In this document: one piece after another, positions 2,933 to 3,962 of the stretch
Position numbering within the stretch: the stretch's first letter is position 1
Layout: each line of letters opens with the position of its first letter
From: Octopus bimaculoides
Taxonomy: Eukaryota
Direction of reading: 5' to 3'
Assembly (NCBI RefSeq): GCF_001194135.2
Contig: NC_068988.1
Span: 35,351,139 to 35,396,525 of the forward strand
Length of the DNA stretch: 45,387 nucleotides
Translations under genes and position numbers: made by a program
Notes under the pieces: model-generated
What the model saw: the letters and a program-made list of their open reading frames with translations, nothing else
The model's database searches: none
What the model was told of the DNA's origin: nothing

Positions 2933-3962
2933 TATTCTTTTATTCTTTTATTCTTTTATATGTTTCAGTCGAATGACTGTGGCCATGCTGGAGCACCACC
3001 GATGTGATCATCTTTCCACTTTCCACCTTTGTCGGAGTGGCTTTTGGTGAAGGATGGAGTTCGATGTTACTGCCTTCTTCTGAGTTTCTTGCCTAGATAT
3101 TGGCTCATCCGGGATCTCGGCGAGCCAGAGGTGAAGTTCACGTTTGAAAATGTCTACATCAACTCCATGGAGTCTCCTCAGATGCTTCGGCAAACAGTCA
3201 AACAGCGGTGGGCCCTTGAAACCCAAGCTATTGTCGTACATCGTCCTTTCCCGAGATGAAACAGTCGGCACAGTGGAAACAGCACAGTGACGTCCTGTTC
3301 GTAGTCTAGTATAGCACTTTATTCCAAAGTTTGGTACCAGTCCTTTCAGTATCTTCCATATATATATCACTGCATACCTCTCCCGCCTTCGTTCCACGGA
3401 ATAGAGTCGAAGCTTTTTCACTCTGTCCCAGTAACTCAGTCGTTCCATTGATGCAATTGTCTTTGTGTAATTTCGTTGGACTGCTTCAAGCTCTACTATC
3501 GTCCTTGTAGTATAAGGTGACCATAGCTGAGAGCAGTAGTCCAGTTGGCTGAGGATAAATGACTTCCATAGTGTCATCATAGTTTCTTCGTACTTTGTCC
3601 GGAAGGTTCTCAGAATCAACCGGCCAGTCTTCTGGATACTGCTACCATTTTGTTGATATGTGTGTGAAATGAGGCATTGTTGCTCATTTCTATTCCAAGA
3701 TCACGCACCGTATTTAATTCTGGGATCGTTGCTCCACTTGGTCCACATACTGATGTCGTGATTCCTGAGCAGTGCTTAACTGGTAACGGGGGAAGGGGCT
3801 GCAATTTACTTGCATTAAATTGCATGTTGTTATCCTCAGCCGATGTATTGATGGCATCTAGATCTTTTTGTTAGAGCAGAGCATCAGAGGTCTCTTTGAC
3901 TGACTGTGCGACTTTTGTGTCGTCAGCATAGCTGTTAAGCATGGCCGTCTCTGTCACTGATG
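2933..3962 (-). mobile_element. CR1/L2-group LINE, 5'-truncated 3' fragment (ORF2 RT C-terminus, short 3' UTR, (AAAGAATA)3 tail); pseudogenised
   Basis: ORF-track pieces 3871-4074, 3616-3825 and 3008-3619 join into SYADDTK (YADD at 3919-3930)...AEDNNMQFNASK...VRDLGI...LDYCSQLWSP...LEAVQR...LYSVERRRERY..IYIWKILKGLVPNFG...FKRELHLWLAEIPDEP. In-frame stops at 3871 and 3617. ORF stop at 3008-3010 is followed by the tail at 3000-2933. Confidence 0.92.

What the first reader, a model, noticed from the sequence alone, without database searches (positions are those of the whole stretch)
2933..3010. CR1/L2-group LINE whose short 3' UTR is the tail of the dominant SINE family: a candidate LINE-SINE partnership
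Seen: 7 nt after the ORF2 stop (3008-3010, minus strand) the LINE reads GGTGGTGCTCCAGCATGGCCACAGTCA (2974-3000), identical at 27/27 nt to the 3' end of SINE family A at 11419-11445. It then continues with gactgaaac and short tandem repeats (AAAGAATA)3, like the SINE tails at 2071, 24035 and 32653. The neighbouring, diverged LINE copy also ends in a variant of this tail right after its ORF (4361-4403), which argues against a chance SINE insertion. Established: many tRNA-SINEs are mobilised by L2/CR1-type LINEs that recognise a shared 3' tail. Inference: this LINE family is the mobiliser of the most abundant SINE here. I do not know whether this pairing has been published for octopus.
Basis: partly seen in the sequence, partly recalled or inferred. 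Interest (0 to 1): 0.72.

Follow-up and report, generated by a model that had tools for sequence, protein, structure and literature searches.

The report
Octopod LINE and SINE share tail
A truncated jumping gene (a CR1-like LINE) ends in the same ~55-base, hairpin-forming tail as the commonest short repeat (a tRNA-like SINE) in this octopus-type sequence; this is the classic sign that the LINE's enzyme copies the SINE, so it is a new example of a well-known arrangement rather than a new kind of thing.

Summary
On the minus strand, a 5'-truncated LINE fragment (2933-3966) ends its ORF2 at 3008-3010. Seven bases later it carries a 27-mer identical to the 3' end of a SINE copy at 11419-11445, followed by GACTGAAAC and three AAAGAATA units. 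No such match is expected by chance.

The tail belongs to the LINE and is not a stray SINE. All 7 LINE copies examined in this subclade (at least 50% amino-acid identity) have it 1-27 nt after the ORF2 stop. These are two copies in the window, two families in Argonauta hians (one intact and full-length) and three metagenome contigs. Five more distant LINEs (41-49% identity) end differently.

All 5 SINE copies in the window carry the tail. The SINE is about 400 bp, with Pol III A/B boxes, a CORE-like body and an internal microsatellite. The shared module folds into two hairpins followed by AAAC and an A-rich repeat of about 8 nt. This resembles the CR1 3' structure and works like the eel UnaL2/UnaSINE pair.

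Mobilisation of the SINE is inferred, not shown. The CR1-versus-L2 assignment was not tested by phylogeny. I found no published octopus LINE/SINE pair in the searchable literature. Verdict: a new member of a known kind, of moderate interest.

The parts
2933..3966 (-). LINE copy W1: a 5'-truncated fragment of about 1 kb holding the C-terminal RT region, the ORF2 C-terminal domain and the complete 3' UTR
   Evidence: tblastn with Argonauta ORF2 gives 63% identity over 3035-3616 and 47% over 3625-3966. Translations are, and 1026 homologues, mostly carrying PF00078, were found.
3008..3619 (-). Open 203-codon C-terminal part of ORF2; stop codon TGA at 3008-3010
2981..3000 (-). Tail hairpin 1: GGU.GUGC[UCCA]GCAU.GCC
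   Evidence: Single-sequence MFE, RNAalifold, pair counts, coordinates
2966..2979 (-). Tail hairpin 2: CAGUC[AUUC]GACUG, followed by AAAC (2962-2965)
   Evidence: The fourth stem pair is U-A in 6 sequences and C-G in 5; the loop varies in sequence and length.
2933..2959 (-). Terminal octamer repeat (AAAGAATA)x3.4, where the LINE ends
   Evidence: TRF
4343..5231 (-). LINE copy W2: a diverged second copy (69% nt identity to W1) with a degenerate ORF. Its 5' side runs into N gap 5303-6172. Its tail variant lies at 4360-4405 and ends in (AC)n next to N gap 4097-4341.
10918..11470 (+). SINE copy S1, full length but interrupted by N gap 11084-11223 at its internal microsatellite; tail at 11416-11470 includes the 27/27 match
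32658..33061 (-). SINE copy S2 (404 bp, no TTTT in the sense strand): A/B-box head, CORE-like body, (TA)n(GT)n, 3' half and tail at 32662-32716
2079..2493 (-). SINE copy S3 (older subfamily); tail at 2084-2138, ending in (GATTAAAA)n
14776..15030 (+). SINE copy S5, 5'-truncated within the internal (GT)n; tail at 14966-15020
23955..24086 (+). SINE copy S4, 5'-truncated (last ~130 nt only); tail at 24029-24083

Best explanation
The segment 2933-3010 is the native 3' end of a CR1-like (CR1/L2-type) non-LTR retrotransposon. It consists of the ORF2 stop, a 7-nt spacer, a ~45-nt module that folds in RNA into two adjacent hairpins followed by AAAC, and a short A-rich octamer repeat in place of poly(A). 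The ~400-bp tRNA-like, CORE-like SINE that recurs in the window carries the same module at its 3' end. The most likely mechanism is 'stringent' 3'-end recognition. The LINE's ORF2 protein (endonuclease plus reverse transcriptase) binds the hairpin module on its own RNA and primes reverse transcription on the terminal repeats at a nicked target. Pol III transcripts of the SINE present the same module and are copied in trans. Shown here: the sequence identity, the tail's presence at the end of all retrieved LINE copies of the subclade and all SINE copies, its conserved foldability, and 5'-truncated copies of both elements. Inferred: protein binding, priming on the repeats, and which LINE subfamily actually drove SINE amplification.
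For: (1) The 27/27 match has zero chance expectation. Over the 40-nt core, W1 is 87-89% identical to SINE copies S1 and S2, as close as SINE copies are to each other (71-89%).
(2) The tail is native to the LINE. It lies 1-27 nt after the ORF2 stop in W1, W2, Argonauta hians L001 and L008, and contigs L002, L003 and L004. These proteins are 42-63% identical to W1. The SINE body matches none of these loci outside the tail.
(3) L008 is an intact element with a 291-aa ORF1 and a 1021-aa ORF2 (Exo_endo_phos_2 and RVT_1) followed by the tail.
(4) More distant LINEs (41-49% identity: L005, L006, L009, L010, L011) have different 3' ends, so the tail is a lineage-specific LINE character.
(5) A covariance model of the tail, run without filters over 76.5 kb, finds it only at LINE 3' ends and SINE 3' ends.
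(6) Structure: the same two-hairpin MFE appears in all 5 sequences folded, with z-scores of -2.2 to -4.4. 94.4% of cells are paired, against 17-42% when partners are slid. One stem-2 pair is U-A in 6 sequences and C-G in 5, and the loop varies.
(7) The SINE has near-consensus A and B boxes. ARAGORN finds tRNA-like folds only at relaxed thresholds. The best-preserved copy has no TTTT, and 5'-truncated copies exist.
(8) Precedent: shared tails are required for UnaL2/UnaSINE retrotransposition (PMC1636434; PMC3747384), and hairpin plus 8-bp microsatellite is the distinctive CR1 3' structure (PMC8665684).
Against: There is no functional evidence. No intact copy of the LINE lies in the window: W1 is a 1-kb fragment with a frameshift and W2 is degenerate. 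The LINE census is small (7 copies) and only two come from the source genome. The covariation may reduce to a single evolutionary event (the window's lineage versus the others), and several hairpin-1 differences sit at CpG-type sites, so the structural support is moderate. The 500-shuffle control is not a probability. Several LINE subfamilies share the tail, so W1's own family need not be the driver. The origin of the SINE's ~150-nt region upstream of the tail is unknown and could come from another LINE. Clade assignment rests on architecture, not on a tree.
Confidence: 0.78

Rival explanations
1. Chance juxtaposition: a 5'-truncated SINE happened to insert, in the same orientation, right behind the LINE's ORF2 stop, so the tail is not part of the LINE.
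For: 5'-truncated SINE copies do exist in the window (S4, S5). The 27/27 identity to a SINE copy would fit a SINE fragment.
Against: Seven of seven LINE copies from at least two species and five assemblies carry the tail starting at the same homologous position, 1-27 nt after the stop. One of them is an intact Argonauta element. No SINE body sequence lies upstream of the tail in any of them.
Confidence: 0.03
2. Reverse direction: the tail arose in the SINE, or in some third element, and LINE lineages captured it by template switching or recombination. The sharing would then reflect LINE 'tail replacement' rather than the SINE borrowing from the LINE.
For: W1 shares the U-A variant of stem 2 and the UCCA loop with the window's SINE copies rather than with the other LINEs. 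That could be read as a recent exchange between SINE and LINE within this genome.
Against: The tail is present in LINE lineages as divergent as 42-50% amino-acid identity, in both Argonauta and the window. This is most simply explained by inheritance within the LINE clade. No SINE with this tail was seen in the 14.5 kb of Argonauta sequence held, although that sample is tiny. In either direction the functional consequence, a shared recognition module, is the same.
Confidence: 0.1
3. Shared tail but the wrong partner: the SINE is or was mobilised by another LINE, either a different subfamily of this clade or an unrelated clade such as the RTE elements reported as active in octopus. The W1 family itself would then be irrelevant.
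For: At least six tail-bearing LINE lineages exist. W1 and W2 are dead fragments. Published evidence for recent LINE activity in octopus concerns RTE, with Dong showing none (PMC9115989). SINE subfamilies differ in loop-1 sequence (UCCA versus CCCA), as do LINE lineages.
Against: W1 has the best tail match to the younger S1/S2 subfamily at 87-89%. No other LINE type with this tail was found in the sequence searched. CR1 families are listed among the recently active elements in O. vulgaris (PMC13282606).
Confidence: 0.12

Closest known systems
Eel UnaL2 LINE / UnaSINE1-2 (L2 clade; Kajikawa & Okada 2002; Nomura et al. 2006, PMC1636434)
   Same: [quoted passage not shown] The tail is the recognition element for the LINE's reverse transcriptase ('stringent' type), and the repeats are thought to allow template slippage (PMC3747384).
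   Different: There is no evident sequence similarity. UnaL2 has one stem with an internal loop and 5-nt TGTAA repeats; here there are two short adjacent hairpins, AAAC, and A-rich repeats of about 8 nt. UnaL2 is experimentally proven and this pair is not. One is vertebrate, the other cephalopod.
Amniote CR1 3' structure and CR1-mobilised SINEs (Suh 2015; PMC8665684; passerine TguSINE1, PMC5729268)
   Same: An APE+RT ORF2, a short 3' UTR, and a hairpin immediately upstream of an 8-bp microsatellite instead of poly(A). Copies are heavily 5'-truncated.
   Different: The avian motif is ATTCTRTG and the hairpin sequence differs. The repeat unit here varies between lineages (AAAGAATA, AGAGTAAA, CATTAAAA, ATACAAG). 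Membership of the CR1 clade proper was not tested by phylogeny.
Bivalve CORE/V/Meta/Deu SINEs with CR1, CR1-Zenon, L2 and Nimb partners (PMC11481361; PMC4824008; PMC4758252)
   Same: These are molluscan tRNA-derived SINEs whose 35-61-bp 3' ends are 72-95% identical to LINE 3' ends. The shared length and identity found here are comparable.
   Different: They come from a different molluscan class, and no cephalopod was included in those studies.
MIR / L2 in mammals
   Same: A CORE-type tRNA SINE carrying the 3' end of an L2/CR1-group LINE.
   Different: It is ancient and extinct, with an unrelated tail sequence. The CORE similarity of the present SINE (CCTTGGGCAAGT...GCCTCAG) is recalled from memory plus one motif quoted in PMC5786205, so it is a lead and not a test.
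Octopus SINEs OK, OR1, OR2 (Ohshima & Okada 1994), one of which is a CORE-SINE (the two reviews read differ: OR1 in PMC4824008, OR2 in PMC4758252)
   Same: tRNA-derived SINEs from octopus. The present family may be one of them or a descendant.
   Different: This could not be compared because the paper and the consensus sequences are not held. No LINE partner for an octopus SINE appears in the SINE/LINE pair table of PMC3747384.

Membership tests
LINE/SINE pair with shared 3' tail ('stringent' type) | The SINE 3' end is homologous to the 3' end of the LINE's 3' UTR | tested here: met
   27/27 identity with zero chance expectation. The ~55-nt alignment of 7 LINE and 5 SINE tails has 72% mean column identity, and the core is 87-89% identical between W1 and S1/S2.
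LINE/SINE pair with shared 3' tail ('stringent' type) | The tail is an intrinsic part of the LINE: present in independent copies and lineages at a fixed position after ORF2 | tested here: met
   7 of 7 copies have it 1-27 nt after the stop, including an intact element. It is absent from 5 more distant LINEs. This is not a genome-wide census.
LINE/SINE pair with shared 3' tail ('stringent' type) | Both elements end in the same kind of short tandem repeat, not poly(A) | tested here: met
   A-rich repeats of 7-8 nt follow AAAC in LINE and SINE copies.
LINE/SINE pair with shared 3' tail ('stringent' type) | A conserved RNA stem-loop in the shared tail | tested here: met
   The same two-hairpin MFE occurs in all 5 sequences folded, with z-scores of -2.2 to -4.4. 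94.4% of cells are paired against 17-42% in slid controls. One covarying pair is U-A in 6 and C-G in 5, and the loop is variable. Support is moderate because this may be a single covariation event.
LINE/SINE pair with shared 3' tail ('stringent' type) | Trans-mobilisation of the SINE by the LINE's proteins | not testable with these tools
   This needs a retrotransposition assay.
LINE/SINE pair with shared 3' tail ('stringent' type) | Overlapping periods of activity in the same genome | not tested
   Co-occurrence in one 45-kb window is shown. Only crude divergences are available: SINE K2P 0.18-0.54 and W1/W2 at 69% identity.
CR1 clade of non-LTR retrotransposons (versus L2, Rex1 and other CR1-group clades) | A single ORF2 with an APE endonuclease and a reverse transcriptase, and no RNase H | tested here: met
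   The relative L008 has a 1021-aa ORF2 with PF14529/PF03372 and PF00078 only. W1 itself holds only the C-terminal part.
CR1 clade of non-LTR retrotransposons (versus L2, Rex1 and other CR1-group clades) | A 3' hairpin followed by a microsatellite of about 8 bp (described as distinctive for CR1 in PMC8665684) | tested here: met
   The motif sequences differ from those of amniote CR1.
CR1 clade of non-LTR retrotransposons (versus L2, Rex1 and other CR1-group clades) | The RT domain groups with CR1 reference elements in a phylogeny | not testable with these tools
   No named CR1, L2 or Rex1 reference proteins were available. Hits carry no informative names, and PDB relatives are only L1 and R2. 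L2 or another CR1-group clade is not excluded.
tRNA-derived SINE | Internal Pol III promoter (A and B boxes) in a tRNA-like head | tested here: inconclusive
   The head reads TGGCTGTGTGG and, about 35 nt further on, GGTTCAGTCCC, both close to the A and B consensus recalled from memory. ARAGORN at default settings and Rfam find no tRNA. ARAGORN finds a cloverleaf in 2 of 3 heads at 80% threshold and in 3 of 3 at 70%.
tRNA-derived SINE | Short, non-coding and dispersed in many copies, with 5'-truncated copies and no internal Pol III terminator | tested here: met
   Five copies of 130-415 bp on both strands. S4 and S5 are truncated. S2 has no TTTT over 404 nt.
CORE-SINE superfamily | A conserved CORE central domain | tested here: inconclusive
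   The SINE body contains CCTTGGG, which PMC5786205 quotes as conserved in CORE and Ceph domains. Wider resemblance to the MIR core is from memory only. Octopus SINEs are classed mainly as tRNA-Core and tRNA-Deu in PMC8967140.

The most novel reading that the evidence does not exclude
One octopod-specific CR1-like LINE clade, still intact in Argonauta hians, is the engine behind the large octopus-lineage SINE expansion. Its two-hairpin plus octamer recognition module has been kept since argonauts and Octopus-type octopods diverged, and SINE subfamilies track LINE subfamilies (UCCA versus CCCA loop; U-A versus C-G stem). This would name the missing autonomous partner of the most discussed repeat class in octopus genomes and make it testable.
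Probability: 0.35. Interest if true: 0.55.

Novelty: new member of a known kind. Interest (0 to 1): 0.4.

Why it matters
SINEs are reported as the main or second-largest repeat class in Octopus genomes and have been linked, controversially, to genome rearrangement and neural gene expression (PMC8967140, PMC12988792, PMC13282606). Yet the papers I could search name no autonomous partner. Work on LINE activity has focused on RTE and Dong elements (PMC9115989), and a 2026 annotation lists 893 'unclassified SINE' families among its recently active elements.

A defined ~55-nt shared tail gives three practical things. It is a marker for classifying octopod SINEs by partner. It is a handle for asking whether any partner LINE is still intact and expressed. 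It is also a compact RNA element for retrotransposition assays. Conceptually it adds nothing new to the shared-tail model.

Tried and rejected
- A DNA pattern scan for the tail in JGI metagenome contigs gave 0 hits.
- The same scan in 185,579 prokaryotic genomes gave one hit in Zafaria sp. It sits in GC-rich sequence with no flanking similarity. About 0.5 such hits are expected by chance for 22 specified bases, so it was rejected.
- Rfam found nothing at gathering threshold in the window and no tRNA at E up to 10 in SINE copy S2. ARAGORN at default settings found none.
- Pfam on the W1 fragment alone gave no significant domain because too little of the RT is left. The domains were therefore taken from relatives.
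- An exact-sequence look-up of the window's ORF was not in the collection, so the source organism could not be confirmed directly.
- No named reference LINE proteins could be obtained for a clade tree.
- Literature: searching the tail and SINE sequences as text strings, and Repbase-style names, gave nothing relevant. Ohshima & Okada 1994 and 2005 and Albertin 2015 are not held, and the SINEBase tables are not held.
- I considered that the SINE stretch just 5' of the tail (TTCGACTAAAG) might be a remnant of a duplicated tail. The covariance model gives no second hit there at E up to 1, so the idea was dropped.
- I considered reading hairpin-1 differences (GUGG/CCAC versus GCGG/CCGC) as compensatory changes. 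They are CpG-type transitions and most sequences show only one side changed, so they are not counted as evidence.

Full report
**Observation**

On the minus strand the window reads TGA (3010-3008), TCACATC, GGTGGTGCTCCAGCATGGCCACAGTCA (3000-2974), TTC, GACTGAAAC, ATAT, (AAAGAATA)x3 (2956-2933) and then (AT)10. The 27-mer is identical to 11419-11445(+) and differs at two positions from 32687-32713(-). None of 100 dinucleotide-preserving shuffles produced a match, even allowing three mismatches.

The reading frame that ends at 3008 is open for 203 codons. In a neighbouring frame it continues back to about 3966 through the YADD motif of a reverse transcriptase. So 2933-3966 is a 5'-truncated fragment of a non-LTR retrotransposon about 1 kb long, called W1 here. 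A second fragment, W2 (4343-5231, minus), is 69% identical in DNA. It ends in GACGGTGCCCAGAATGGCCACAGCTTTAAACTGAAACTAATAAAAC(AC)n, which begins 20 nt after its position-homologous stop.

**The SINE**

Its parts, in order, are:
- a head with A-box-like TGGCTGTGTGG and B-box-like GGTTCAGTCCC;
- a body containing CCTTGGGCAAGT...GCCTCAG;
- an internal (TA)n(GT)n microsatellite of variable length;
- a 3' half of about 150 nt;
- the tail.

Three long copies are present: 10918-11470(+), 32658-33061(-) and 2079-2493(-). Two copies are 5'-truncated: 14776-15030(+) and 23955-24086(+).

The evidence for a tRNA origin is weak. ARAGORN at default settings and Rfam do not call a tRNA. At 80% threshold ARAGORN finds a cloverleaf in two of the three heads. 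The best-preserved copy has no TTTT in 404 nt.

The copies fall into at least two subfamilies, with K2P distances of 0.18 within S1/S2 and 0.3-0.5 otherwise. Both subfamilies carry the tail.

**Is the tail part of the LINE?**

A protein search with the conceptual W1 translation found 1026 relatives. Only four exceeded 50% identity, and a profile search added one more at 50%. I fetched the DNA around these and around more distant relatives.

All close relatives carry the tail just after the ORF2 stop:
- Argonauta hians L001: stop, 27 nt, GGTGGTGCACCAGCATGACCACAGCCGACTCGGCTGAAAC, then (CATTAAAA)n.
- L003: nearly the same as L001.
- L002: stop, 10 nt, GGCGGTGCCCCAGCATGGCCACAGCCTGCGGGCTGAAAC, then (AGAGTAAA)n.
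- L004: stop, 1 nt, GGCGGTGCTCCAGCATGGCCTCAGCCACTGGCTGAAAC, then (TAAAAGAA)n.
- Argonauta L008: stop, 13 nt, GGCGGTGCCCCAGCATGGCCCCAGCCGGCAATGGCTGAAAC, then (ATACAAG)n.

L008 is an intact full-length element. It has a 291-aa ORF1 with weak Myb/SANT-like and CCCH zinc-finger matches, and a 1021-aa ORF2 with endonuclease and RT domains.

Counting W1 and W2, 7 of 7 copies have the tail at the homologous position. None has SINE body sequence upstream of it. LINEs at 41-49% identity (L005, L006, L009, L010, L011) have short 3' UTRs ending in other short repeats and lack this motif. A covariance model of the tail, run without filters over 76.5 kb of window and loci, hits only these LINE 3' ends and the five SINE 3' ends.

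A chance SINE insertion behind W1 is therefore effectively excluded. The tail is a lineage-specific 3' UTR of an octopod LINE subclade, and the SINE carries the whole of it. Homology starts at GGYGGTGC, and upstream of that the two elements are unrelated.

**Structure**

Five tails (four LINE, one SINE) were folded on their own, and all give the same minimum-energy structure: GGY.GUGC[NCCA]GCAU.GCC, one base, then CAGYC[3-6 nt loop]GRCUG, followed by unpaired AAAC and the repeats. Their z-scores against shuffles range from -2.2 to -4.4. RNAalifold predicts the same consensus.

On the 12-sequence alignment 94.4% of cells are paired, against 17-42% when the 3' partners are slid by one to three columns. 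The fourth pair of hairpin 2 is U-A in six sequences (W1 and all SINE copies) and C-G in five (all sequences from outside the window). W2 shows the C/A intermediate. The loop of hairpin 2 varies freely in sequence and length.

This is the pattern expected of a functional stem, but it may amount to a single evolutionary event. The differences in hairpin 1 sit at CpG-type sites. I therefore rate the structural evidence as moderate.

**Mechanism**

The anatomy has four features:
- an APE+RT ORF2;
- a very short 3' UTR;
- hairpins directly upstream of an A-rich repeat of 7-8 nt;
- no poly(A), and frequent 5' truncation of both elements.

This matches the 'stringent' class of LINEs, in which the reverse transcriptase recognises a specific 3' structure and a partner SINE borrows it (PMC3747384). 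For eel UnaL2/UnaSINE the shared hairpin is experimentally required, and the terminal repeats are thought to permit slippage during priming (PMC1636434; PMC3747384). For CR1, a hairpin plus an 8-bp microsatellite is the recognised 3' signature (PMC8665684).

I therefore propose that ORF2 protein of this LINE clade binds the two-hairpin module and primes on the octamer repeat at a nicked target. Pol III transcripts of the SINE would be copied in trans because they end in the same module. The sequence sharing, its position and its foldability are shown here. Binding, priming and the identity of the driving subfamily are inferred. W1 has the closest tail to the younger S1/S2 SINE subfamily at 87-89%, but W1 itself is a dead fragment.

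**Comparison with what is known**

In how it works, this resembles UnaL2/UnaSINE and CR1-mobilised SINEs. Among molluscs, CORE, V, Meta and Deu SINEs of bivalves share 35-61 bp (72-95% identity) with CR1, CR1-Zenon, L2 and Nimb LINEs (PMC11481361).

The membership tests came out as follows:
- Shared-tail pair: the sequence criteria are met. Trans-mobilisation and co-activity are untested.
- CR1 clade proper: domain architecture and 3' structure are met. The RT phylogeny could not be done because no named references were available. 'CR1/L2-group' is as far as the evidence goes.
- tRNA-derived and CORE-SINE: inconclusive.

**Novelty**

I found no octopus LINE/SINE pair in the table of known pairs in PMC3747384, which does not mention octopus or mollusc at all. 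Nor is one named in the octopus repeat papers I could read:
- PMC9115989 deals with RTE and Dong LINEs.
- PMC13282606 lists 893 unclassified SINE families and 13 CR1 families among its recently active elements.
- PMC8967140 classes octopus SINEs as tRNA-Core and tRNA-Deu without a LINE suffix.
- PMC12988792 was also read and names no partner.

Text searches for the sequences and for Repbase-style names found nothing. Repbase, Dfam, the Albertin 2015 supplement and Ohshima & Okada 1994 could not be consulted, so prior knowledge there is possible.

Either way this is a further instance of a textbook relationship. It is useful for cephalopod genomics but not surprising to a transposon specialist. 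The window's organism was not confirmed directly, but the nearest relatives of its LINE are from the octopod Argonauta hians.

**Verdict**

- Observation: confirmed.
- Interpretation: supported.
- Novelty: new member of a known kind.
- Interest: about 0.4.

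Noticed in passing
window 12879-13304 (-) and 14213-14841 (-): Two diverged mariner-type DNA transposon remnants, about 69% identical to each other in DNA. The translation shows typical transposase motifs, and 14557-14841 hits Pfam Transposase_1 (PF01359) at E=4.5e-21. 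SINE copy S5 lies directly next to the second one.
   Followed up: partly
window N-runs, e.g. 4097-4341, 11084-11223, 5303-6172 (14 runs, 4983 N in all): Several assembly gaps (seen at 1078, 2585, 4097 and 11084) directly abut (TA)n, (GT)n or (AC)n microsatellites. One lies inside SINE copy S1 at the SINE's internal microsatellite, and one abuts the (AC)n end of LINE W2. The SINE's own microsatellite may be a recurrent cause of gaps in this assembly.
   Followed up: no
window 32850-32910, 11062-11262, 2290-2335 (inside the SINE copies): The SINE carries an internal (TA)n(GT)n microsatellite of variable length between its CORE-like body and its 3' half. This means the family seeds dinucleotide microsatellites wherever it inserts.
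   Followed up: no
window 2140-2150 and 24015-24030: SINE copies S3 and S4 share a ~10-nt insertion (GTTCTTCAAA / ATTTCTTCAC) just 5' of the tail. S1, S2 and S5 lack it, which marks a separate SINE subfamily that keeps the same tail.
   Followed up: partly
window 2933-5231 (-): Two LINE fragments of the same subclade, W2 then W1, lie head to tail in the same orientation. They are separated only by a gap and low-complexity sequence. This could be an insertion next to the earlier copy's terminal repeats, or coincidence.
   Followed up: no
L008 1029-4946 (Argonauta hians GCA_054771915.1, BAAFZT010000002.1): An apparently intact full-length LINE of the tail-bearing subclade. ORF1 is 291 aa with weak Myb/SANT-like and CCCH zinc-finger matches. 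It overlaps an uninterrupted 1021-aa ORF2, which is followed by the tail. This suggests recent or current activity in argonauts.
   Followed up: partly
window 7435-7803 (+): A 123-codon open frame (…FIQFDIVDFYATISKVLLDKAL…) with no Pfam match. It may be a remnant of another mobile element, but it remains unexplained.
   Followed up: partly
window 21397-21504 and 21689-21799; 20029-20118 and 26750-26840 (opposite strands); 8839-8930 and 43704-43787: Further short repeat pairs (73-79% identical) that do not belong to the SINE or LINE studied here. They were not classified.
   Followed up: no
L010 3100-3190, L011 1810-1920, L005 ~1090-1175, L009 4830-4880: More distant LINE relatives (41-49% identity) lack the octopod tail. 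They keep a similar general layout: a 3' UTR of about 35-190 nt that ends in 4-10-nt tandem repeats (ACTTCAAGTA, AAGTAT, ATCAAGTTAG, GGTAAGGTA).
   Followed up: partly
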